Shown here: positions 1,803 to 28,720 of the stretch, piece by piece
How positions within the stretch are numbered: the first letter of the stretch is position 1
Layout of the letters: each line of letters begins with the position of its first letter
NCBI GenBank assembly: GCA_038087875.1
Contig: JAXLNO010005352.1
Location: 62,001 to 126,000 of the forward strand
DNA length: 64,000 bases
Reading direction: 5' to 3'
From: Malacoraja senta
Lineage: Eukaryota
Program-made: the position numbers and the translations under genes
Notes under the pieces: model-generated
Told to the model about the DNA's origin: nothing
Seen by the model: the letters and a program-made list of their open reading frames with translations, nothing else
The model's database searches: none

Positions 1803-2045
1803 GATAGACAGAAAAAGCTGGATTAACTTAGTGGGTCATGCAGCATCTCTGGAGAAAAGGAATAGGTCGGATTGAGATCTTTCTCCAGACTGAGAGTCAT
1901 GGGAAAGGGAAACAAGAGAGATAGACGGTGATATTGAGAGATATAGAACAAAATATATGCAAAAATGTAACAATGATAAAGGAAACAGGCCATTATTAGT
2001 TGTGGGCTAGGTGAAAACGAGTTACAGACAATGAAAGTCACCAGG
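1803..2045 (-). mobile_element. Penelope-like terminal fragment
   Basis: Reverse complement resembles 5590-5835. Confidence 0.65.
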
Positions 2046-2129
2046 ATGACCACATCATCTCCATGCTGCAACTTGGCAGCCATTGGCCCGCCGTCACTGC
2101 AGCACCATCAGACAATTCCCTGTGAAAAC

Positions 2130-5399: not shown

Positions 5400-5836
5400 G
5401 TGTCTCTAACCACCCCAGAGTTATCCGGGATCTCCCCATTCCTCCAGTTCTGGTCTCCAGTGGTCATGGTGAACTTCACAGCAAATTGAAGGAACAGGAT
5501 CTCACATTTCGCTTGGGCAGCTTACAGACCAGTGGTATGAATATTGATTTATCTAACTTCAGGTAGCCTTGGCATTCCCTCTCCATCCCACCCAAGTTAC
5601 ACTAGCCTCTCATTTTCTCCCAATAAACATCTACCAATGGCCTGTTTCCTTTATCATCGTTACTTTTTTGCATATCTTTCATTCATTGTTCTTTATCTCT
5701 CTACATCATTGTTGAAATCTCGTTTCCCTTATTCCCCAAACCAGTCTGAAGAAGGGCCTCGACCCGAAACATCACCCATTCCTGTCCAGAGATGCTGCCT
5801 ATCCCGCTGAGTTACTCCAACATTTTGTGTCTATCT
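5400..5836 (+). mobile_element. Penelope-like 3' fragment with hammerhead motif (5746-5773)
   Basis: Encodes the PLE C-terminus-like KLKEQDLTFRLGSLQTSGMNIDLSNFR*, followed by CTGAAGA-AGGG..CCC-GAAA-CATC. Confidence 0.75.
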
Positions 5837-8362: not shown

Positions 8363-8499
8363 TCTTCTTCTTTCGTGTGGCGTGCACAGCCTAAAGTTGT
8401 TAGACAACTTGTTCTAGTTGATCTTCTGTTTGTGCACGTCGAGTTGATTGCATTAGTCGAAACACGGCGGACCACGTGAAGGTTGCAATCTTCCACCCC
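8363..8499 (-). mobile_element. 137-bp non-autonomous retroelement with a 5' HDV-like ribozyme and an (AAG)n tail
   Basis: Flanked by an 11-bp near-perfect TSD, aagaagacact (8352-8362) / aagatgacact (8500-8510). Interrupts the CR1 endonuclease frame NCKGKKT|LIGVIYRPP. Ends ...GCCACACGAAAGAAGAAGA. Confidence 0.85.
8446..8499 (-). ncRNA. Minimal HDV-like (CPEB3-type) ribozyme fold
   Basis: GGGGUGG(P1) AA GAUUGCA(P2) ACC(P3) UUCACGU(L3) GGU(P3') CCGCCGU(P1') GUUUCGA CUAA(J4/2) UGCAAUC(P2'). Confidence 0.8.
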
Positions 8500-11400
8500 A
8501 AGATGACACTAATTGGTGTTATCTACAGACCCCCAAATAGTAGCCCGGATGTAGAGTGTAAGTTGCAGCAGGAGTTACAACTGGCATGTAACAAAGGTAA
8601 TGCCACTGTGGTGATGGGGGATTTCAATATGCAGGTAGACTGGGAAAATCAGGTTGGTTCAGGACCCCAAGAAAGAGAGTTTGTAGAATGCCTCCGAGAT
8701 GGATTCTTAGAGCAGCTTGTAATGGAGCCGACCAGAGAAAAGGCAATTCTGGATTTAGTGTTGTCCAATGAACCAAATTTGATAAGAGAACTCGAGGTAA
8801 AGGAACCGCTTGGAGGTAGTGATCATAATATGATTAGTTTTAATCTGCAATGTGAGAAGGAGAAGGTTAAATCGGAAGTGTCAGTGATGCAGTTGAACAA
8901 AGGGGATTATGAAGGCATGAGAGAGGAGCTGGCCAAGGTAGACTGGAAAGGGATACTAGCAGGAATGACGGTGGAACAGCAATGGCAGGAATTTCTGGGC
9001 ATAATCCGGAAGACGCAGGATCATTTCATTCCAAAAAGGAAGAAAGATTCTAAGGGGAGTAGGAGGCAACCGTGGATGACAAGGGAAGTTAGGGATAAAA
9101 ATAAAACGAAAAGAAAAGATGTATAACACAGCAAAGAGTAGCCGGAAGCCAGAGGATTGGGAAACTTTCATAGGACAACAGAAGGAAACAAAACGAGCAA
9201 TACGGGCTGAAAAGATGAAGTACGAGGGGAAGCTGACCAGGAATGTAGATATGCTAGAAGGACAGTAAAAGCTTCTTTAGATATGTTAAGGGAAAAAGAA
9301 TAGCAAAGTCAAATGTGGGTCCCTTGAAGGCAGACACGGGTGAAATTATTATGGGGAACAAGGAAATGGCAGAAGAGTTGAACAGGTACTTCGGATCTGT
9401 CTTCACTAAGGAAGACACAAACAATCTCCCAGAAGTACTGGAGGACAGAGGATCTAAGGGGTTCAAGGAACTGAAAGAAATTTTCATTAGGCGAGAAATA
9501 GTATTGGGTAGGCTAATGGGACTGAAGGATGATAAATCCCCTGGGCCTGATGGACTGCATTCCAGGGTCCTCAGGGAGGTGGCTCTAGATATAGTGGACG
9601 CATTGGTGATCATTTTCCAATGTTCAATAGATTCAGGATCAGTTCCTGTGGATTGGAGGATAGCTAATGTTATCACACTTTTCAAGAAAGGAGCGAGAGA
9701 GAAAACGGGGAACTACAGACCAGTTAGCCTGACTTTGGTGGTGGGAAAGATGCTGGAGTCAATTTATTAAAGAGGTAATAATGGGTCTTTTGTATAGCAG
9801 TAAAAGGATTTGTCCAAGTCAGCATGGATTTATGAAAGGAAAATTATGCTTGACTAATCTTCTGGAATTTTTTGAGGATGTGACAAGTAAAATGGATGAA
9901 GGGGAGCCAGTGGATGTAGTGTATCTAGACTTTCAGAAAGCCTTTGATAAGGTCCCGCACGGGAGACTGGTGACTAAAATTAGAGCACATGGTATTGGGG
10001 GTAGGGTGTTGATGTGGATAGAAAATTGGTTGACAGACAGGAAGCAAAGAGTAGGAGTGAACGGGTCCTTTAATGAATGGCAGGCAGTGGCGGGTGGAGT
10101 GCCGCAAGGATCGGTGTTGGGGCCGCAACTGTTTACCATATATATTAATGATTTGGAAGAGAGGATTAGGAGCAACACTAGCGAGTTTGCAGATGACACA
10201 AAGCTGGGTGGCAGTGTGAACTGTGAGAGGATGTTAGGAGGTTGCAGGGTGACCTGGACAGGTTGAGTGAGTGGGCAGATGCGTGGCAGATGCAGTATAA
10301 CATAGCTAAATGTGAGGTTATCCACTTTGGTGGCAAAAACAAGGGGGCAGATTATTATCTCAATGGGGTTAGGTTAGGTAAGGGGGAGGTACCGTGAGAC
10401 CTGGGTGTCCTTGTACACCGGTCACTGAAAGTTGGCGTGCAGGTACAGCTGGTAGTGAAGAAAGCTAATGGAATGTTGGCTTTCATAACAAGAGGATTTC
10501 AGTTTAGGAGTAGAGAGGTTCTTCTGCAATCGTATAGGGCTCTAGTAAGACCACATCTGGAATATTGCGTACAGTTTTGGTCTCCTAATTTGAGGAAGGA
10601 CATCCTTGTGATTGAGGCAGTGCAGCATAGGTTCACAAGATTGATCCCTGGGATGACGGGACTGTCATATGAGGAAAGATTGAAAAGACTAGACTTGTAT
10701 TCACTGGAGTTTAGAAGGATGAGGGGCTATCTTATAGAACATATAAATTTATAAAAGGACTGGACATAGAAAACATAGAAAATAGGTGCAGGAGTAGGCC
10801 ATTCGGCCCTTCGAGCCTGCACCGCGAGCCTGCACCTGGACAAGCTAGATGCAGGAAAAATGTTCCCAATGTTGGGCGAGTCCAGAACCAGGAGCCACAG
10901 TCTTAGAATAAAGGGGAGGTCATTTAAGACTGAGGTGAGAAAAAACGTTTTCACCCAGAGAGTTGTGAATTTGTGGAATTCCCTGCCACAGAGGGCAGTG
11001 GAGGCCAAATCACTGGATGGATTTAAGAGAGAGTTAGATAGAGCTCTAGGGGCTAGAGAAATCAAGGGATATGGGGAGAAGGCAGGCACGGGTTATTGAT
11101 TGGGGACGATGGTGGCGCTGGCTCGAAGGGCCGAATGGCCTCCTCCTGCACCTATTTTTTATGTTCTATGTTTCTATGTAAACATCATGGAGCAAGGAGG
11201 AGACAGTGGCAAGGGAATGGGAAAAGTATCAGAGAACAAGGCTAATGGCTTCAATCTTCCCAGCGTTTAGTGACAGTAAATTACGGAGTATTTCCTGATA
11301 GTCTAGAGGTGGAGGGGGCTCAGTAGAAATGGTGAGTTAGCAGATACATAAAGAAACTGATGACGGTGTTGTTTCAGGTGGTGCTGCTGAGGGATGGGTC

Positions 11401-13284: not shown

Positions 13285-13690
13285 TGAGCTAGCTAATTGG
13301 ATCCAAAATGGGCTTGGTAACAGGAAACAGGTAGTGATAGAAGGATTGGAAATATGTGACTTGTGATGGACTACAGTGATTAGTGTTGGGATCTTTGCTG
13401 TTTTGTGACAACATAGATAAGACGATGAAGATGACATATGGCATGCTTGCCTTCATAGATCGAGGCATAGAATATAAGAGTTGGAACATCAAGGTGCAAC
13501 TTTACAAAACACTTGTTAGACTATATGGAGTACTGCATGCAGTTCTGATCACCACTGATGTGATAGTGCTGGAGAGTGCAGTGGAGATTCATCAGGATGA
13601 CTGGATTGGAAGATTTTAGTCATGGGAGAGATTGGATGAGCTGGGCTTTTTTTCTTGGACTGAAACAGGCTGAGGGGGCTGTTAGTGATA
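13285..13690 (+). mobile_element. Old CR1 ORF2 fragment
   Basis: YGMLAFIDRGIEYKSWNIKVQLYKTLVR. Confidence 0.75.
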
Positions 13691-16600
13691 GTGGAACATA
13701 GATATATTTACGAGAGGCACTCCTCTCCGGACTATGAATCAAAAGGATGGAAATGCAAATATAGAACTGGCAGTAGTGGGTTAGCGGGAAGAGAAATAGA
13801 GCATCACATATTGGAAGGTCTCATAACTTTGCCCATGGTGTTAGCCCCAGTTATATACATGGAGGTGTTCCTGGTCTAGCTATTAAAAAAGTAAATTATT
13901 AGTAAATTTAAAAGCAAGAAGCAATCTGAAGTTGCTGGAGATCAGGCAGTATCTGCAAAGTAGGAAAACATTAATGCTGATAACCTGAAACATTAATTGT
14001 GACCTTTCAAAACTCGTGGAAGATCATCTTGTTGATGCATTAACTGTTTGCACCTCCTCAAGTGCTGCCTGACATGATTAGTATCCCCAGCATTTCCAGT
14101 TATTTGCTGACAAGTATAAGGTTTCACTCTCCACAGCCAACAAAAATAGTGTAAGCATGCCCGAGGCAGAAGATTAAAAATGAATGAAGGCAATTTGCCA
14201 AAAAGATTGGTTCAGCTTTTGTGAATGAATTAGTGTTCAAGCCATAGAAACAGGGCACACCAGAAAGATTTTGTGCATATGTGATTGCAAGAAGCAGTGA
14301 CGGCCACTAATATTTTCATTTCTTTATATCTTGCGTAAAGGTCCAGGTCCAAAACGAAACTGATTTGGCTGTTGCTCATTTCAAGTACCTGTTCAGGTCC
14401 TTTCACAGACTCAACCCTTCAATGAGTACTGAGTGTGTATACCATGCATATGGTTTCATTCAAGTGATGCCCAGGCAAAGTGCATCCAGGAACCAAAGCC
14501 AATCTAGTCCTAGAAAGACTGTGCCTTTTGTGAGATTCATTCACTTTAACCACAGTCAAAAACCTCAGGCTCCATTTCTGAGCATCTTCTGGAAAGGATT
14601 TTGCACTCTGTTACTCCAGCTTTACAGAACTTCATTTCAGAGATGTCTTCAGTTACCTCAACTGTTTCACAACTATCTGATCACTGTCTAGACTAGAACA
14701 TAATCCTTATATCGAGAGGAACAGTTTCCTCAGCTGTCTTCAGCTGTCCACTTGCACAGAGTGAAGGACCTTGATGAATAGGTAAACTAGCACCTTAGTT
14801 ACTCACGCATACATTGTCTCAAAGCAGGTTTTAAATAGCTGCATGATGCTATTATATCGGCCTGAATTTTGCAACACCATTTTCAGTGCTCGCCATTACC
14901 AACAGACAATAGACCAAACAGTCTGGCATCATGTGCACTGGGAAACTATGGATAGCCTACACAGGAATAAATACTCCGATATCGCTCCCCCTACACCACG
15001 TATCCACAGGAAACAGTGGATACCTTGCTCTTCCCAGCCTAGAGAACCCAAAGCGTGCGAAATTGGAAATTTACACAATAGAAGCTTAATAAACATGAAA
15101 GAAAACAACAGCCCACTCACATGCAAGTGAATTTTGAATGATGTTGTCTCATTTATGGTCAAATCATTCTGAAGGCCCTGAAAGGTGACTATCACAAGTG
15201 TGGTTATCTGTTATTGGAGATTATTCTGCCATAACCTATCATTCGTTCTATCATTTTGTGTTCTGTATGTGATCGAGGTCGATGTTGAGATGTTTAACCA
15301 AGGCTCTTCTACAAAATGAGTAGTTAAAGAGATGGGCTGTTGCTTGGACTGACCAGGGAGACAATAGATCCTCCTTCCAACATGATGAGGAAAAAGATTT
15401 ATAATAAATGAAAGCCTGTCAATAAGTGTAATGAACTCTAAGTACAATTCATTTGCTGCTGAATGCATGCATTCATTCATTTATAGAGTAATATCCATTA
15501 AACCAATACGGTGTGATTTTAGCTTAGAGTGGAATTATATTAGGGAATCTGGTTATCTTTAAAAAAAAAGATTAGAATGCACTCAGATGGGAGAAAGAAT
15601 TGTTGAATGATGTGGAACTCAGCAAGAAGCCCTGTGTCAGGGAAGGTCAGAAGTACAGATTCTGAGCTTCTTAGACCACCCAGTGAAATTGCTAAGTATG
15701 TTAATGGAACATAATAAACTGCAACTTAATGTGAAAGTTAAGTCCAAGCTGATAAGAACCCATAGGTTTACATTTAACTGAAATGGACAATTAAAAAAAA
15801 TCACTTAGGCAGACCTTCCAACTTATTGAAAGGGACTCCCAATCATAGGTTGATGTAATGGACAATGCAAACCCTCAGTCCATTTCTTTACATTCATTTA
15901 CAACCTCACTGAGCTTAAGGGACCCACATCACTCCTGACTACAACCTTCTTTCTAATACAAATGATGCAGGTTGTTTTTATTTTGATACGTCTTATATGA
16001 GTGCTTATACAAACCCTTATGGTACTTCCTACTTTCTGTTTTGCATCTGCGAAGTCATACTTTTCATGTTGAATTTATGCTTTCAGTTCATTTGACCATC
16101 AAAGTCCATGTGTTTATAGTAAGATTACTTATTTGGGTCACACAAACTAACCTGCCCTGCTTCTGAAACATTTCATTCACACATCTTATTTATATTTTCT
16201 GGTTTAATCATTTCTCGTCGTTCAACTTTCCCTTTACCTGCGGCACACTCTCTTTTCTCTCTCCCTGTGTTTATTTTGGAACTATTATTATTATTCCACC
16301 TTGTTGGCTTTGCGAGTTTAAAGTTCATCCATTTTGCCAGGCGGAGCCTGTCCCGAGGACAAAATTCCGGACTGTTCCAGAACTTCCAACTGGGAAAAAC
16401 AGGCAGTAGTATTTTGTTTTTAAATATATATTTTTTAAAACACTCATCTGGAGATACAGACACAAGCAGAACGAATCACATCCAAAAGGAGTTTAAATAT
16501 CTTTAAGGAATTATCATGAAGATGTTTCCCCCATTCATTAAATGTGCCACGATAATGCATTTTATGGAAAACTTTATTTAAACTGTGCAATCATTCAAAA

Positions 16601-18452
16601 TGCAGACTATTTTACAACAGTTTTAAAACATTTTGGCTTTTTAGACTAGTTATATTTTTGGCATGAGTCAGCAAAATTACAGATCAGGCACCTGAGCTCT
16701 CGGCAGCATTCACTGCAATGCTGTTATAACATAGGAACACACAGTTTCTCAGTAAAAGTAGTTAAAGACATAAATGAGGTACATTCACAAATCAAGGCAA
16801 GCGTTTATACTCCTGCAGCACTGGACAGAAAGTGAAGCTGATCCCCTGAGACAAATAAAATTTGATATAATGCAGATTCACTGTCCAGAGCCGGGATCAC
16901 AAACACTGCCTTTACAAGATCATTGGCAATTGAAGATAGAAGGCTCAGAACACCTGAGATATATTGGACTGCACCCTCCACTTCTTCCCTTTAGTTCACA
17001 TCTTATCAATATGCTCTAAATCAAAAAAAAACTAACACATTAATCATTCTCATCACAAATGAATAAAACACAGTAACCAAATAAAAGCAGTTTACAATGA
17101 CTTTTCTCCCACCCTTCCTAACTGTTATAATGAGTGGTCACGTGACATACTTCAGTACCTCCAAGGTGCAAGCAGCAAATGTCACGTAGATACCCGTTAC
17201 TCCAGCAACACAAATTTTAAACATAATTAAAATGAAAATACAATTTCAGACAGTTTAACACATAATTCCAGATTAATGTGCATCAACAAATACTTAACTT
17301 AAAAACGAGGTAGTAGTTTTAGTTATATTTCAATTAACATCTCCAATCTCAAAACCGCCATCAATTGGCCAGCATATTTTCCAGACTTTGCCTTTACTGG
17401 TCTTAAAAGGCACTCTACCATTCAAAACTGTGCTTACATTTCCAAATACATTGATGTTATCAGGCACCAATAATAATCAGGCCCTCCTAATAAATTTAAA
17501 ATGTAGTCACTTTAATTAATGTAATTACAAAATTTGATTTGCTGGAAATCAATGACGAGTTTCCTTAGCAACAGCAAGTGAGGTCCTTCATAAATATCTT
17601 GCTGTACTCTCTAATGATGTAGTGTAAACACCAGTTTCAACCTACATCATATCTGAAGCAGAATTGAAAAGCGTGGAAAAAATGCTGGTGAATCTACAAC
17701 AGTTCCCATGCTTGAAGTACTGTACATTACATGGCAGAAGGTATTTTATAAAGATATATTTTCACTGTTTTTTGTTGCAGGGTACTACGGAAGTGACGAT
17801 GATATCAAACAGATTTTAAATATCTGGATTTCCATTATTCACCTGATTCATGTCCTGGACGGGGAATGTGTCTTAGCCAGCTAGTACACAAAGCTGGACA
17901 GTTACAAGGTGAACAGGGGATGGGGTGGTGTTCAATATTTTACAGTTGCCTTTGTCAAAGGAAAATTTAAATGATTACTGATGCTCCCCGCAGCACAAGG
18001 TGGAACATGTGCTCTAAGTGGGTGCAACTCTGTAAAATTTGGCTTTATGAACACACATTTTCAAACTTTTCAATAGCTCAAATTGAACACCAGACTGCCC
18101 AGAGTAGGAAGATGAACAGTAAGAGAGTAACAGTTGCACAAGTGTCACCATAATTGAACCTCAGCAACTGCTACCTCAATACTGTGGGAATGAGGAGATA
18201 GGACAATAAACAGCGTTTTAAACACACAATAAGAAAAGTCCATAATGATTACTATTCTATGACATGGTGTACAGTATTTCAAAATGACTGCTGTCTAGCA
18301 GTAAGATGCCAATTTTGATTTGGAATGTTAACCATCATCATTTGTTGCTGCATCAAAATAAGCAAGTCATTAAAACAACATTTAAAAGACACATTCCAGG
18401 AGCGAAGAACTAAACTCCTGTTGTTGATACACAAAGGTGAACAAAAAATAAA

Positions 18453-18487
18453 TCTTTGGTTTTCACGGACGGCTGATCTAGCTGTAT
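18453..18487 (-). promoter_or_regulatory. miR-9-5p site: 8mer seed plus 12-nt perfect 3' pairing
   Basis: Plus strand reads TCTTTGGTT-ttcacggacggctg-ATCTAGCTGTAT, i.e. miR-9-5p nt 1-9 and nt 10-21. Confidence 0.75.
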
Positions 18488-19872
18488 TTGAAAACAAAAT
18501 ATTAATACTGAATTTATTGGTTTTTAAAAATCTTTAGTTGTGCTCCTCTGCTCCCTGAAATTTGTCAAGGCATGAGACTGAACACTTTTATTGCTCAATA
18601 TTGATTACATAATTTAAAGCTATTACAAGTCCCTTTTCCCCCCACATACTCCAGAGCTGTTGTGGCGTTTGATTTACTTGTTAGGAAAGTAATGCAAACC
18701 ATGTAACTGTGAGCCACAAAAATATGCAGTTTTCTTTGGAGAAGGGCTCAGGCAATCACGTGATAGCAATTCAACTGAATTCTTAAAGGGAACGCACAGG
18801 CAACTGGAGTATTTTACTTATGTTTGTGTAGAAAAATCTGATATTTCAAAAATATTAGAATTTATTTTCATCACGAAAAGATGTCATTTGCCCATTTAAA
18901 AATAGCAAATAACGAATGATGTTTTATGATTAGTTGGATGAAGAGAATCCTCTTATAATCAATAATATGAAACAATTATTGCAATTTGGAGAAGAATGTA
19001 CTTTTACAAAATTACATCTTGTTGCACAAGAGAATTCTCTACATTTCATTCATCGACTCTACTGCAGGTTTTATGAAAAGTGACACAGTTCAGACCTGGA
19101 ATTCAGATACTACATAGATACAGTGCCCCGTCAACATTAAATCTTTGGATATAGTTGCTTATCATTTACCTTTGTATACCGCCTTTACCAACAACACAAT
19201 GGGATGACACTAATCTGAAAGACAAGTGCTAAACTGACTATAAAACTGATCTACACTATAAAGAGCAGAGTGCAGCTAACCAGAAGTCGTACTCAGTAGT
19301 TAGTATTAAGGATCTTTCATTGAGCCGATATTAGAACAGCATTCACACATTAAAATCTTTGGGATTTGGATAAGACAAAGAATTGGCTTAAGTATTTTTG
19401 GACAATAAATCATTGTATATCTATTTACTATAATTCAATTTGTTTCCAGTTAGAGATTGGGTTTTAATAGCATTTGGACGTTATCACATCAATATAGCTC
19501 ATTCCCTAAATTAGGTTTCCAATTATTCTAGTGTAATATGGTATTAGAAAATCAATTCCAATTCGAGACACATACAAGTCACTACTTCTGATTGATTAGA
19601 AACTATTATAAAATTAAGAAATTCAACAGTTAAATGGCCCAAAAAATCCTAGTAAAAAGTTATGTACATTTTCTTTGGTAAGCATATTTTAAAGTAGTTT
19701 TGATATATCGGCATCGCAGAGGTGTGAACATTTACTGGCACACAATTCTAGTGATCTGTTCTAACTCTTAAAAGCTACACAGTAACTATTTTAAAAGCAA
19801 TAATTCAAACAAGATACCCTGTCAGTACACCACACACTTGTGTGCAGCAGTTCAAACGTAACAAATATTTGA

Positions 19873-19880
19873 TCCCTGAG
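19873..19880 (-). promoter_or_regulatory. miR-125 8mer site
   Basis: Plus TCCCTGAG = mRNA CUCAGGGA; about 40 nt from a let-7 7mer-m8 at 19918-19924. Confidence 0.65.
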
Positions 19881-20682
19881 GTTAGATAAAGAATAACACT
19901 AAAATAGGTTTTATAAAGAGGTAGTATCAAACAGGAGGTGCAAGGCTAGAGCACATGAGAGTAGCAGCTTCTATTCCCTCAACATTTTTGGTAACATGAA
20001 GCTCCATTTTGTAATGCAAGCAATTCTAAAAACAAATACAAATGGTGCTCTTTGGATTGGAACTCTGAAGGAGTTATTTCATTTAATACCGTTAAGCTGA
20101 AGTTGTTTTATAATCAGAAGGTTTATAAAAATTGTGGTGGAGATAGTTATTGAATATCCAAGCACAGTTATATTATTTAAAGTAACTCTACATCCCTTTC
20201 AACTCGATAAAAACATTATATTCCTATTATTTTGAACATGAATTCCTTGAATAGTTTAGTTAGACTTAAAACTCTGCAGGACCTTTTTATTCCAGGACTC
20301 AATTTAATTAAATCAATTAAGTGTGACATTACATAATTTTTCATTTTGCAGTTTGTTAAATGAAGGCATTTGATGAGTTCTGGGGGGGACTAGAGGGGTT
20401 TTATGTCAAATAGTTTAAAAAAAAAAAAACATACTGTTAATTAACTTAAAAGATGACAATGAAGAATTTATTGACATGGAACTGCCTATAATTAAATGTA
20501 TTTAGTCTACCGTGATAGGTGTGGATTTTTAGTGGAGGTTTTTTGGTTATGGCTAGCCAATACCACACACTTCAAAGCTGCAGGGAAAAAATTATAGGAG
20601 TCCGCTTACTAATTCGAACATGTCACCAAGTGGCACGGGAAATTCACTTGGAATATTTAACTTTAGATAAAGTTTAATTCAT

Positions 20683-20902
20683 AGGTAAACACAAAATCCT
20701 GGAGAAACTCAGCAGGACAGGCAGCATCTCTGGAGAGAAGGCATGTGTGACATTTTGGGTCGAGAACCCGAGTCTGAAGAAGGGTCTCCACCCGAAACGT
20801 CACCCATTCCTTCTCTCCAGAGATGCTGCCTGTCCTGCTGAGTTACTCCAGCATTTTGTGTCTACCTTTGATTTAAAACCAGCATCTGCAGTTCCTTCCT
20901 AC
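20683..20902. mobile_element. Fold-back Penelope-derived element inside the putative PRTG 3' UTR
   Basis: Inverted arms at about 20683-20769 and 20782-20867; intact hammerhead core on plus at 20774-20801. Confidence 0.8.
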
Positions 20903-21893
20903 AAAGTTAACTTCATCTTTAGTTTGAACATTCTCATCAAGTTGAACTTTCCTCGGAGTCCTGCACTTACAGATAATAAACTCACTATACACTCCACAAG
21001 GTTTCCCTTTGAAAAAAGTGAACGCAGCAAACCAGAATGCTCAAGCACCATCCCACTGGATACAATTCTTGTTTGAAATGGACCAGTCACATAGTGTCCG
21101 AAGCATCTGTTAGAATGCATGAAATCAGAACTGAACCGGCGCAGCACAAGGCTGTGATAGGGGTCAACGCAGGAGGCATGTTTTCCCTAATTTCTGCATC
21201 TGCATTGTATTTTCCAGTTTCTAGAACAGGAAGCATCTAGGTAATCATTTCAGTTAACCCTGGCCTGCTTCAATTAGTCTGCTGTGCCTCCCAACAGATA
21301 GTCAATGAAACTGGATGTACTCATAGCTTTTCAGCTTCAGATTCAATGGGAATACATTCACTCTGCCTATAGCGCAGAGTTCAGATATCTTTCAAAATTA
21401 ACATTATGGACAAGCTCAATAAGAACATCAATGAAGCACAAAACTTCAACAGGCACCTCATTCAATCCAAAGCACTGCTTCTTTTCTCTAATCAAACCAG
21501 CTCTACAATTTTCCCTCAACAGCTTCATGTAAATGCACATTATAAATGTAGAAGCTGTGTAAAGTCATTTAAAATTTCATGGATTGAAATTATGAATTCA
21601 AAACCTTCCAATAACTTGACTGGATATCTTATTTTATATTAACAATATAATCAAGACAACTTCAGCTCAAAGGCACTGTGTATATGGCCCCTTTTCAGAA
21701 TCTCACTTGCTCATGTAAACAGATCTTTAGTCAAACACTCTCATGGCAACATCCTTGCAACCCCTACATCACAGCAGAACAACACCAACAAACATTTTTT
21801 AAATCAAAACAACACATCTCTGTAAGGAAGTATCAACTATTAGGTAATGGAGTCAAATCCTGTTAAATACTGGAGTTTATCATTAGGTAAAAT

Positions 21894-21901
21894 TGAGGTA
21901 G
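21894..21901 (-). promoter_or_regulatory. let-7 8mer site in the proximal PRTG 3' UTR
   Basis: Plus TGAGGTAG = mRNA CUACCUCA, about 280 nt after the stop codon. Confidence 0.75.
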
Positions 21902-22174
21902 ATTTTTTCAGCAGAAAACCTGAAACAGTATTTCTGCTCCAATGATATACCGTTCAAATTAAAATCAAAAGAAATGTAATGGTCCTTTTCACATTTTTTT
22001 GACATAGACATTCATGGTGGGTAAAATAAAAAATATGGAACATTCATAAACCAAGTGTGTAAGAACCTGGAGTGACTAAAAAAATGACCCAGACTTTCTT
22101 TCCAGAGTGTTCTTTGGCTTACTGCACATTTGTCCATTGTACAGATAAATTATTGTGAAACTGGATCTGGTTGC

Positions 22175-22606
22175 TTAAATTGGAAATTGGTTGTTGGTGT
22201 TTTCACTTGTTGGTTTTGAAGACATGTGGCTTGGTCGAGGCAGCGCCAGTAGGTCAGAGGTAGTGGACTGAGAAACAACCAACAGACGTTGATCTTCCTC
22301 GGAGGTAGGCTGGACAGGAATGCTGGCAGTTTCCCCCTGGACAGACGATCCCAAGAAGGCAGGTGGATCACACGTGACAGAAGAAAGGTGCAGCATTTCC
22401 ATCTCCTCCCTGGAATCATGCGAATACCTGCCCGAATCTCCAGTTTCGTGGCTTCCATCACTGTTGTGAGAATATTCAGTATCTCCCATGGTGGTAAACA
22501 CAGCTGGCAATGATGTGGGGGGAATCAGTACCGAGTCTCCTGATTCCTCACGGCTCAGCCCAGTCAGCTGGTAGGGGCTCACGCCAAACTCGTTTCTTCT
22601 CACTGG
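22175..22606 (-). CDS. PRTG: Protogenin last coding exon, through the stop codon
   Basis: ttaacAG|CCAGTG; 143 codons plus TAA; contains the conserved DTEYSHNSDGSHETGDSGRYSHDS motif and ends NNQFPI*. Confidence 0.94.
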   Translation of the reverse strand, partial: PVRRNEFGVSPYQLTGLSREESGDSVLIPPTSLPAVFTTMGDTEYSHNSDGSHETGDSGRYSHDSREEMEMLHLSSVTCDPPAFLGSSVQGETASIPVQPTSEEDQRLLVVSQSTTSDLLALPRPSHMSSKPTSENTNNQFPI

Positions 22607-28297: not shown

Positions 28298-28720
28298 AGG
28301 CACAAAAAGCTGGAGTAACTCAGCGGGACAGGCTGCATCTCTGGAGAGAAGGGATGGGTGACGTTTCGTGTCGAGACCCTTCTTCAGACTGGTTAGGGAT
28401 GAAGGAAATGAGAGATATAGATGGTGATGTGGGGAGATAAAGAACAATGAATGAAAGATATGCAAAAAAGAAACGATGATAAAGGAAACAGGCCATTGTT
28501 AGCTGTTTGTGGGGTGAAAATGAGAAGCTAGTGCGACTTGGGTGGGGGAGGGATAGAGAAGGAATGACGGGGCTACCTGAAGTGAGAGAAATCAATATTC
28601 ATACCACTGGGCTGCAAGTTCTTCCAATTTGCATTTAGCCTCACTCTGACAATGGGGGAGACCGAGGACAGAAAGGTCAGTGTAGGAATGGGAAGGAGAA
28701 TTAAAGTGTCCAGCCACCGA
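28298..28720 (-). mobile_element. Penelope-like 3' fragment with hammerhead motif (28360-28387), nested in a CR1 3' remnant (about 27990-28745)
   Basis: Antisense homolog of 5400-5836; accctctagttcttgat-like sequence repeats on both sides. Confidence 0.8.

What the first reader, a model, noticed from the sequence alone, without database searches (positions are those of the whole stretch)
18453..18487. Split near-perfect miR-9 site in the putative PRTG 3' UTR: candidate TDMD trigger or very high-affinity site
Seen: the plus strand spells miR-9-5p (UCUUUGGUUAUCUAGCUGUAUGA) nt 1-9 at 18453-18461 and nt 10-21 at 18476-18487, separated by 14 nt. The minus-strand mRNA could therefore match 21 of 23 miRNA positions around a target-side loop. 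A 12-mer match this close to an 8mer is roughly a 1-in-a-million coincidence per site (back-of-envelope). Known: seed plus central loop plus extensive 3' pairing is the architecture of ZSWIM8-dependent target-directed miRNA degradation triggers, and Prtg is a reported miR-9 target. Inference: a double-negative switch in which early Prtg mRNA destroys or sequesters miR-9. The 14-nt loop is longer than in typical triggers.
Basis: partly seen in the sequence, partly recalled or inferred. Interest (0 to 1): 0.82.

Follow-up and report, generated by a model that had tools for sequence, protein, structure and literature searches.

The report
Split miR-9 site in skate PRTG
The 3' UTR of the protogenin gene of a skate-like fish carries an ancient miR-9 binding site that, in cartilaginous fishes only, has a second 11-12-base match to the rest of miR-9 across a 14-base gap; this should bind miR-9 very tightly and might destroy it, which is untested.

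Summary
Plus strand 18453-18461 spells miR-9-5p nt 1-9 and 18476-18487 spells nt 10-21, with 14 nt between them. The minus strand is the protogenin (PRTG) gene of a batoid close to skates. Its stop codon is at 22175-22177. A poly(A) signal at 16578-16573 is conserved in four species, so the site lies inside a ~5.6 kb 3' UTR. A 3' match this long beside a seed has a chance of about 6e-6 per site.

The 8mer seed is orthologous in skate, chimaera, sturgeon, gar and bird. The 3' arm is present only in the two cartilaginous fishes. There, 20 of 21 arm bases are identical, 5 of 14 spacer bases differ, and spacer length is kept. Of 33 miR-9 sites in the five UTRs, only this orthologous pair has more than 6 nt of 3' match.

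The architecture fits a very high-affinity seed plus extended 3' site. It meets the seed and 3'-pairing criteria for a TDMD trigger, with a 3' arm of -16.7 kcal/mol. However, the 14-15 nt bridge exceeds the 3-11 nt of validated triggers, and altering loop length weakens ZSWIM8 recruitment in vitro.

TDMD is therefore possible (about 0.3) but unproven.

The parts
18453..18461 (-). Seed arm. The mRNA reads AACCAAAGA, a miR-9-5p 8mer (t1 A plus match to nt 2-8) with an added pair to nt 9. The flanks are A/U-rich.
   Evidence: The orthologous 8mer is conserved in Callorhinchus, Acipenser, Lepisosteus and Chauna (A2).
18462..18475 (-). 14-nt bridge (mRNA CAGCCGTCCGTGAA) between the two arms. It has no complementarity to miR-9.
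   Evidence: In Callorhinchus the length is kept but 5 of 14 bases differ. Fisher test of arm versus spacer divergence: p = 0.028.
18476..18487 (-). 3' arm. The mRNA reads ATACAGCTAGAT, 12 contiguous Watson-Crick pairs to miR-9-5p nt 10-21.
   Evidence: 3' arm duplex -16.7 to -17.2 kcal/mol. In Callorhinchus 11 of 12 bases are identical; only the base facing nt 10 differs (T to A). The arm is absent in sturgeon, gar and bird.
18488..18527 (-). Conserved 5' flank of the site (36/40 identical to Callorhinchus). It includes a miR-200bc/429 8mer, CAGTATTA, at 18503-18510.
   Evidence: The miR-200 seed identity is from my own knowledge of the miR-200b sequence.
16555..22174 (-). Inferred PRTG 3' UTR, about 5.6 kb. 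It holds 7 miR-9 sites (two 8mers, five 7mer-A1), 3 let-7 7mer-m8 sites and 2 miR-125 7mer-m8 sites.
   Evidence: (7 CCAAAGA observed against 0.5 expected, Poisson 1e-6). Colinear conserved islands with L001-L004.
16573..16578 (-). Conserved distal poly(A) signal AATAAA within the block GATTGCACAGTTTAAATAAA. Cross-species similarity stops just after it.
   Evidence: A3. The block is shared by skate, Callorhinchus, gar and bird.
22175..22603 (-). Last coding exon of PRTG (cytoplasmic tail), with the TAA stop at 22175-22177. The ORF start upstream of the splice acceptor is not real coding sequence.
   Evidence: (tblastn: 94% identity to the PRTG of two skates, Amblyraja and Leucoraja).
19672..19679 (-). 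Second miR-9 8mer in the UTR. It has no extended 3' pairing and serves as an ordinary comparison site.
   Evidence: longest 3' match 4 nt, duplex -11.8 kcal/mol.

Best explanation
This is a bipartite miR-9-5p site in the 3' UTR of protogenin mRNA. Its seed half is an ancient 8mer shared by jawed vertebrates. In cartilaginous fishes a second half has been added or retained: 11-12 contiguous pairs to miR-9 nt 10/11-21, joined to the seed match by a flexible 14-15 nt target-only bridge.

The proposed mechanism is as follows. AGO-miR-9 docks by the seed. The 3' arm then zippers onto the miRNA 3' half while the bridge loops out of the central cleft. The nt 9-11 region is probably left unpaired inside AGO, which fits the non-conserved base opposite nt 10.

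The result would be unusually tight, long-lived binding, making PRTG mRNA hypersensitive to the first miR-9 that appears in neural progenitors. Together with six other miR-9 sites and the let-7 and miR-125 sites, this would shut the early-progenitor gene off sharply.

Shown here: the sequence, gene identity, position within the UTR, conservation pattern and pairing energies. Inferred: the binding mode, the gain in affinity and the effect on PRTG. Whether the same pairing also exposes miR-9 to ZSWIM8 is treated as the main rival.
For: - Sequence and chance.
- Gene and UTR.
- Conservation: the seed is conserved in 5 of 5 species. The arm is conserved between skate and Callorhinchus while the spacer diverges at constant length.
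- Uniqueness: it is the only one of 33 miR-9 sites in five UTRs with more than 6 nt of 3' match. Its duplex energy is -26.3 / -24.3 kcal/mol against -8.7 to -19.3 for the others.
- Bridge length is compatible with binding: AGO2 seed and supplementary helices can be bridged by unstructured target loops of 1-15 nt, with more than 10-fold affinity gain for strong pairing and detectable extra repression (bioRxiv 10.1101/476960).
- Long 3' pairing can add up to hundreds-fold affinity (PMC8940178).
- PRTG is a validated miR-9, let-7 and miR-125 target and an early-progenitor marker (PMC3848287, PMC9918188, 10.64898/2026.10.02.755877).
Against: - Affinity falls as the offset grows beyond +4 (PMC8940178), so a +14 offset is far from optimal.
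- Ordinary supplementary pairing needs only 3-5 bp at nt 13-16. Repression alone does not obviously explain why 11 bp reaching nt 21 are kept.
- The whole ~100-nt island is conserved, including flanks that do not pair to miR-9. Arm conservation is therefore not specific proof of selection for miR-9 pairing: 3.2% of 35-nt UTR windows show the same 9+11 conservation.
- Only two cartilaginous species could be compared.
- There are no expression or binding data.
Confidence: 0.5

Rival explanations
1. ZSWIM8-dependent TDMD trigger. Seed plus extended 3' pairing pulls the miR-9 3' end out of the PAZ pocket. ZSWIM8-CUL3 then ubiquitylates AGO and miR-9 is degraded. Abundant early PRTG mRNA would thus hold miR-9 down until PRTG transcription falls, giving a reciprocal-negative timer.
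For: - The site has an 8mer seed with A/U flanks and 11-12 contiguous 3' pairs reaching nt 21.
- The 3' arm energy of -16.7 to -16.9 kcal/mol lies at the strong end of the -9.6 to -17.1 range of validated triggers. Twelve of 13 validated triggers have at least 6 contiguous 3' pairs (PMC10899785).
- Both arms and the 5' flank are conserved across the two main living branches of cartilaginous fishes. RNA flanking the trigger contributes to ZSWIM8 binding (PMC13083262).
- mRNA 3' UTRs are established triggers (PMC13041716, PMC12863257). A Drosophila miR-9 family member, miR-9b, is a TDMD substrate of Kah.
- Search pipelines penalise offsets greater than 3, so such sites are under-sampled.
Against: - The bridge of 14-15 nt exceeds the 3-11 nt seen in validated triggers.
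- The loop is formally target-only, with no unpaired miRNA bases in skate.
- nt 22-23 are unpaired.
- miR-9-5p is not named among ZSWIM8-sensitive miRNAs in the main text of two mouse surveys. This is weak evidence, because bony vertebrates lack the arm.
- No paper links PRTG with ZSWIM8 or TDMD.
Confidence: 0.3
2. Only the seed is functional for miR-9. The 3' arm is conserved because it overlaps some other element in a chondrichthyan-specific conserved island (another miRNA or protein site, or RNA structure). Its complementarity to miR-9 is a historical accident or a relic.
For: - The island is conserved well beyond the miR-9-pairing bases: TTTTCAA and a miR-200bc 8mer lie upstream.
- About 20% of the UTR lies in perfectly conserved runs of at least 11 nt.
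- Bony vertebrates manage with the seed alone.
Against: - The chance of an 11-12-nt miR-9 3' match beside a miR-9 8mer is 3e-5 to 6e-6.
- The spacer diverges while the arms do not (p = 0.028).
- I know of no other conserved miRNA seed that matches the arm (from memory only).
Confidence: 0.12
3. A plus-strand feature: a decayed miR-9 precursor or retro-copy split by a 14-nt insertion, or an antisense transcript.
For: The plus strand spells the mature miRNA in sense. An 8-nt match to miR-9-3p nt 2-9 lies 128 nt downstream at 18615-18622.
Against: - No Rfam mir-9 hit on either strand, even at E <= 10.
- The plus-strand fold is no better than shuffles (z = -0.01).
- There is no 3p arm at hairpin distance.
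- The region is colinear with PRTG 3' UTRs of four other species.
- The miR-9-3p match is not conserved at that position in Callorhinchus.
Confidence: 0.02
4. An AGO2 slicing site for miR-9.
For: 21 of 23 positions are complementary, including nt 9-11 in skate.
Against: A 14-nt target bulge sits between t9 and t10, directly next to the scissile position. The pair to nt 10 is lost in Callorhinchus. Single-nucleotide bulges were already expected to disrupt slicing in RBNS (PMC8940178).
Confidence: 0.02

Closest known systems
CYRANO (OIP5-AS1) miR-7 TDMD site
   Same: An 8mer seed plus a long contiguous 3' arm (14 bp there, 11-12 bp here), a positive offset, deep conservation of the site and its flanks, and a neural context.
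   Different: CYRANO is a lncRNA with a 4-nt trigger loop (PMC13083262). Here the host is an mRNA 3' UTR and the bridge is 14-15 nt. TDMD is proven for CYRANO and untested here.
mRNA 3' UTR TDMD triggers (NREP/miR-29b, BCL2L11/miR-221/222, Serpine1/miR-30, Plagl1 and Lrrc58/miR-322/503)
   Same: A trigger-like site embedded in the 3' UTR of a protein-coding gene that is itself a target of the miRNA.
   Different: Validated loops are 3-11 nt (PMC10899785). All of these were shown to be ZSWIM8-dependent in mammals. The present site is restricted to cartilaginous fishes and has no functional data.
Drosophila Kah trigger for miR-9b
   Same: A miR-9 family member is subject to target-directed degradation by an endogenous transcript (bioRxiv 10.1101/2024.12.11.627053).
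   Different: Different species, gene and family member. There is no homology to the PRTG site.
Seed plus 3'-supplementary or 'positive-offset' sites (for example lin-41 let-7 sites; AGO2 structure 6N4O)
   Same: Seed and 3' helices joined by an unpaired target bridge. Loops up to 15 nt still raise affinity and repression in vitro and in reporters (bioRxiv 10.1101/476960).
   Different: Typical supplementary pairing is 3-5 bp at nt 13-16 with an offset of 0 to +4. Here there are 11-12 bp to nt 21 with an offset of +14.
Published miR-9 regulation of Prtg in chick and mouse
   Same: Same gene, same miRNA and the same orthologous 8mer (conserved in the bird locus L004). The let-7 and miR-125 co-targeting is also conserved.
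   Different: Bony-vertebrate sites examined here are seed-only. The extended arm is new and lineage-specific.

Membership tests
ZSWIM8-dependent TDMD trigger site | Canonical seed match, usually an 8mer with A/U flanks | tested here: met
   ACCAAAGA with A/U-rich flanks. Conserved in five species.
ZSWIM8-dependent TDMD trigger site | Extended 3' pairing: at least 6 contiguous bp and a 3' energy of about -9.6 to -17.1 kcal/mol | tested here: met
   12 bp (skate) and 11 bp (Callorhinchus) to nt 10/11-21; -16.7 / -16.9 kcal/mol by ViennaRNA duplexfold. The range is taken from PMC10899785.
ZSWIM8-dependent TDMD trigger site | Internal loop of the size seen in validated triggers (3-11 nt) that leaves miRNA nt 9-10 unpaired | tested here: not met
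   The bridge is 14 nt and target-only in skate. In Callorhinchus it is 15 nt opposite one miRNA base. Loop-length changes reduce ZSWIM8 recruitment (PMC13083262).
ZSWIM8-dependent TDMD trigger site | The trigger lowers the miRNA in a ZSWIM8-dependent way, with tailing and trimming | not testable with these tools
   No small-RNA or knockout data are available. No literature was found linking PRTG with TDMD.
ZSWIM8-dependent TDMD trigger site | Both pairing regions are evolutionarily conserved | tested here: inconclusive
   Conserved between skate and chimaera (20/21 arm bases). The arm is absent from sturgeon, gar and bird. Only two cartilaginous species were obtainable.
Canonical miRNA site with 3'-supplementary pairing | A seed match located in the 3' UTR of an expressed mRNA | tested here: met
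   The site lies 3.7 kb after the stop codon and 1.9 kb before the conserved poly(A) signal, with conserved UTR islands on both sides. Expression itself was not tested.
Canonical miRNA site with 3'-supplementary pairing | Pairing that includes nt 13-16, bridged by a target loop of 1-15 nt | tested here: met
   nt 10/11-21 are paired and the bridge is 14-15 nt. The loop limit comes from bioRxiv 10.1101/476960.
mir-9 precursor (Rfam) on the plus strand | A hairpin with 5p and 3p arms that matches the covariance model | tested here: not met
   No mir-9 hit at E <= 10. The plus-strand fold has z = -0.01.
AGO2 slicing target | Uninterrupted pairing across nt 9-12 | tested here: not met
   A 14-nt bulge lies between t9 and t10. 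There is a t10 mismatch in Callorhinchus.

The most novel reading that the evidence does not exclude
PRTG mRNA of cartilaginous fishes may carry a TDMD trigger for miR-9-5p that predates the split between the skate and chimaera lineages. That would make it the first vertebrate trigger for this master neural miRNA and the first natural trigger with a bridge of at least 14 nt. Early-progenitor PRTG transcripts would destroy miR-9 until their own transcription wanes, forming a reciprocal-negative developmental timer. It would also show that ZSWIM8 recognition tolerates much longer loops than current search pipelines allow.
Probability: 0.27. Interest if true: 0.75.

Novelty: new member of a known kind. 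Interest (0 to 1): 0.5.

Why it matters
miR-9 and PRTG sit on opposite sides of the early-to-late neural progenitor switch. A site that binds miR-9 far more tightly than a normal target would sharpen that switch. It could do so either by making PRTG hypersensitive to miR-9 or, if it triggers degradation, by letting PRTG mRNA control miR-9.

The site is also a natural test case for how long the bridge between seed and 3' pairing can be. Current TDMD searches penalise offsets above 3 (PMC13041716), so a functional +14 site would widen the search space.

miR-9, AGO2 and ZSWIM8 are conserved. The skate element can therefore be tested in standard mammalian cells.

Tried and rejected
- Other sharks and rays: loci could not be fetched. 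Hemiscyllium and Hypanus files were too large. The Cetorhinus, Pristis and Leucoraja gene ranges exceed 100 kb. The Leucoraja X2, Narcine X2 and Stegostoma X4 isoforms are not on record.
- Spurious ORFs over the site: I tried to reach sequencing-run contigs covering the site by searching the two ORFs that overlap it (18279-18497 minus, 18325-18537 plus). Neither gave a hit.
- Metagenome scan: an exact-pattern scan of metagenome contigs for the bipartite site gave 0 hits.
- Terminal-exon search: the representative search with the terminal exon returned mostly fragments. It was useful only for naming the gene.
- Rfam scan around the site: only sub-threshold chance hits (let-7 at 18.5 bits against a 53.5 cut-off), so the plus-strand miRNA-gene reading was rejected.
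- Local mRNA folding: it predicts a weak stem, GUUUUCA/UGAAAAC, closing the arm and bridge in skate. This stem is not maintained in Callorhinchus, so I give it no weight.
- Mouse ZSWIM8 surveys: text hits for 'miR-9' were all miR-92, miR-93 or miR-99, so they say nothing direct about miR-9.
- Origin of the arm: whether it was gained in cartilaginous fishes or lost in bony vertebrates could not be decided, because no cyclostome sequence was available.

Full report
**Observation.** The plus strand at 18453-18461 reads TCTTTGGTT and at 18476-18487 reads ATCTAGCTGTAT. These are miR-9-5p nt 1-9 and nt 10-21, separated by the 14 nt TTCACGGACGGCTG. In minus-strand (mRNA) sense the element is ATACAGCTAGAT | CAGCCGTCCGTGAA | AACCAAAGA. 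It is an 8mer seed site extended to t9, a 14-nt target-only bridge, and 12 contiguous pairs to nt 10-21. nt 22-23 are unpaired. That cartilaginous fishes have the same mature miR-9-5p is an inference from this invariance.

**Chance.** I used a first-order Markov model of this UTR. A 3' match of at least 12 nt within 0-30 nt of a given seed site has P = 5.8e-6, and a match of at least 11 nt has P = 3e-5.

**Gene and transcript context.** The ORF at 22175-22603 (minus) matches shark 'protogenin A / protogenin-like' and sturgeon protogenin. A full-length shark PRTG retrieves PRTG orthologues throughout vertebrates. tblastn of chondrichthyan PRTG proteins against the window finds 9-10 minus-strand exons between 22.2 and 61.1 kb. 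Identity is 94.4% to Amblyraja and 93.9% to Leucoraja PRTG, against 74-82% to sharks, other rays and chimaera. The window is therefore from a batoid close to skates. An FN3 exon is confirmed by Pfam.

**Position in the 3' UTR.** The stop codon is TAA at 22175-22177. Downstream of it, colinear conserved islands align with the PRTG downstream regions of four species:
- Acipenser (L001)
- Callorhinchus (L002)
- Lepisosteus and the bird Chauna (L003, L004)

These islands run to window ~16560. There, the block GATTGCACAGTTTAAATAAA with its AATAAA (16578-16573) is shared by skate, chimaera, gar and bird, and similarity then ends (A3). The inferred 3' UTR is therefore about 5.6 kb. The site lies 3.7 kb after the stop and 1.9 kb before the conserved poly(A) signal.

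One caveat applies. A non-conserved AATAAA at 18518-18513 lies 26 nt upstream of the 3' arm (Callorhinchus has AATGAA). It could give a skate-specific short isoform that ends at the site.

**A heavily miRNA-targeted UTR.** The UTR has seven CCAAAGA sites (two 8mers, five 7mer-A1) where 0.5 are expected (Poisson 1e-6). It also has three let-7 and two miR-125 7mer-m8 sites. The other four species likewise carry 4-10 miR-9 sites. A let-7/miR-125 pair about 44-48 nt apart is colinear in skate, chimaera, sturgeon and gar. This matches the literature. PRTG is a validated miR-9 target in chick (PMC3848287). It is a let-7/miR-125/miR-9 target in mouse retina (PMC9918188). It is an early-progenitor marker predicted to be co-targeted by miR-9 and let-7 across vertebrates (bioRxiv 10.64898/2026.10.02.755877).

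**Conservation of the split site.** Window 18525-18425 aligns to Callorhinchus L002:87211-87316 at 83% identity (E = 3e-23).
- The seed arm is identical.
- The 3' arm is identical at 11 of 12 positions. Only the base facing miR-9 nt 10 differs (T to A).
- The spacer keeps its length, but 5 of 14 bases differ.
- Arm versus spacer divergence gives Fisher p = 0.028.

In sturgeon, gar and bird the orthologous 8mer is present. Its orthology is fixed by flanking islands and, in the two fishes, by the shared ACCTTTG..TAT block just downstream. There is no trace of the 3' arm in these three species (A2). Among all 33 miR-9 sites in the five UTRs, only the skate and chimaera orthologues have more than 6 nt of contiguous 3' match. 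Their duplex energies are -26.3 and -24.3 kcal/mol, against -8.7 to -19.3 for the rest.

The seed is therefore pan-gnathostome, and the arm is specific to cartilaginous fishes, present in both of their main living branches. Whether it was gained there or lost in bony vertebrates cannot be decided without a cyclostome sequence.

**Limits of the conservation argument.** The skate-chimaera UTR is a mosaic: 64% identity overall, but about 20% of bases lie in perfect runs of at least 11 nt. In 3.2% of 35-nt windows the same 9+11 arm positions are fully conserved. The island also extends beyond the miR-9-pairing bases: 36/40 bases upstream are identical, including a miR-200bc/429 8mer, CAGTATTA, at 18503-18510. 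Conservation alone therefore does not prove selection for miR-9 pairing. The case rests on conservation combined with the very improbable complementarity.

I could not add more elasmobranchs. Every attempt failed for technical reasons. Searches with ORFs overlapping the site and a metagenome pattern scan found nothing.

**Rejected readings.** Two alternatives can be set aside.
- *Plus-strand miR-9 gene relic.* There is no Rfam mir-9 hit at E <= 10 on either strand. The plus-strand fold is no better than shuffles.
- *Slicing site.* The 14-nt bulge abuts the scissile position, and the t10 pair is not conserved.

**Mechanism.** The architecture satisfies two of the three sequence criteria for TDMD triggers summarised in PMC10899785.
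- It has a strong seed site with A/U flanks.
- It has extended 3' pairing. The 3' arm scores -16.7 to -16.9 kcal/mol, at the strong end of the -9.6 to -17.1 range of validated triggers.
- It fails the third criterion. Validated loops are 3-11 nt, whereas this bridge is 14-15 nt.

[quoted passage not shown] The text implies that longer-loop variants still exceeded seed-only RNA with wild-type AGO2.

On the other side, AGO2 biochemistry shows that seed and 3' helices can be bridged by unstructured loops of 1-15 nt. With strong pairing this gives more than 10-fold affinity gain and measurable extra repression (bioRxiv 10.1101/476960). Long 3' pairing can add hundreds-fold affinity, although the benefit declines beyond offset +4 (PMC8940178). 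A long arm may be exactly what is needed to make a long-offset site effective.

My weighting is as follows.
- **Best-supported reading (0.5):** a very high-affinity bipartite miR-9 site that makes PRTG hypersensitive to miR-9.
- **Genuine ZSWIM8-dependent trigger (about 0.3):** helped by the arm reaching nt 21, the conserved 5' flank, the precedent of mRNA-UTR triggers and of miR-9b TDMD in flies, and the fact that search pipelines penalise offsets above 3 and so would miss such sites (PMC13041716).
- **Residual readings:** seed-only function with the arm held by another constraint (0.12), a plus-strand relic (0.02) and slicing (0.02).

No paper connects PRTG with ZSWIM8 or TDMD. miR-9 is not named as ZSWIM8-sensitive in the main text of two mouse surveys. 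This has little bearing, because bony vertebrates lack the arm.

**Verdict.**
- The sequence observation is confirmed.
- The gene and UTR assignment is confirmed by comparative evidence.
- Conservation of both halves holds within cartilaginous fishes but not across gnathostomes.
- The TDMD interpretation is plausible but unproven, and the bridge length counts against it.
- I file the site as a new, lineage-specific member of the class of seed plus extended-3' miRNA sites, not as an established TDMD trigger.
- Interest is moderate (0.5). It would rise considerably if a heterologous ZSWIM8 test were positive.

Noticed in passing
window 19874-19924 (-); L002 85646-85696; L001 37590-37639; L003 67049-67103: A let-7 7mer-m8 and a miR-125 7mer-m8 site lie 44-48 nt apart. 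The pair is colinear in skate, chimaera, sturgeon and gar PRTG 3' UTRs, so it looks like an ancient paired module for two timing-related miRNAs.
   Followed up: partly
window 18503-18510 (-); L002 ~87226: A miR-200bc/429 8mer (CAGTATTA) lies 15 nt 5' of the miR-9 3' arm. It is conserved between skate and Callorhinchus but absent at that position in sturgeon, gar and bird. The seed identity is from memory.
   Followed up: partly
window 18426-18438 (-): The block ACCTTTGTGTATC, 14 nt 3' of the seed, is shared by skate, chimaera, sturgeon and gar. The UGUAUAU core resembles a Pumilio element (from memory, untested).
   Followed up: no
window 18513-18518 (-): A non-conserved AATAAA lies 26 nt upstream of the 3' arm (AATGAA in Callorhinchus). 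It may be a skate-only proximal poly(A) site that would end an isoform right at the miR-9 site.
   Followed up: partly
window 16555-16600 (-); L002 ~88740-88765; L003 ~69910-69935; L004 ~101520-101545: The distal poly(A) block GATTGCACAGTTTAAATAAA is almost identical in skate, chimaera, gar and bird, an unusually deep conservation for a 3'-end region.
   Followed up: yes
window 8476-11099 (+): Frameshifted non-LTR retrotransposon fragments (Exo_endo_phos_2 endonuclease and RVT_1 reverse transcriptase ORFs). They coincide with the GC-skew bump at 8-12 kb. A related RT-tail ORF lies at 13383-13619.
   Followed up: partly
window 1823-2083 (-), 5544-5810 (+), 28320-28595 (-): Three copies of an interspersed repeat give near-identical spurious ORFs (…MACFLYH.FFAYLSFIVLYL…). 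One copy lies inside a PRTG intron.
   Followed up: no
window 18380-18560 (-): The skate mRNA is predicted to form an outer stem (CAGGGAGCAGAGGAGC with GUUCUUCGCUCCUGG) enclosing the whole miR-200/miR-9 island (z = -2.8). The 5' strand is not alignable in Callorhinchus.
   Followed up: partly
L001 38445-38472: A different sturgeon miR-9 8mer has GCTAG (miR-9 nt 12-16) directly abutting the seed match, which is a negative-offset supplementary arrangement. Its duplex energy is -18.6 kcal/mol.
   Followed up: no
window 18614-18623 (-): A miR-9-3p 8mer-type match (AGCTTTAA) lies 130 nt upstream of the miR-9-5p split site. It is not conserved at this position in Callorhinchus. Other species carry miR-9-3p sites elsewhere in the UTR.
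   Followed up: partly
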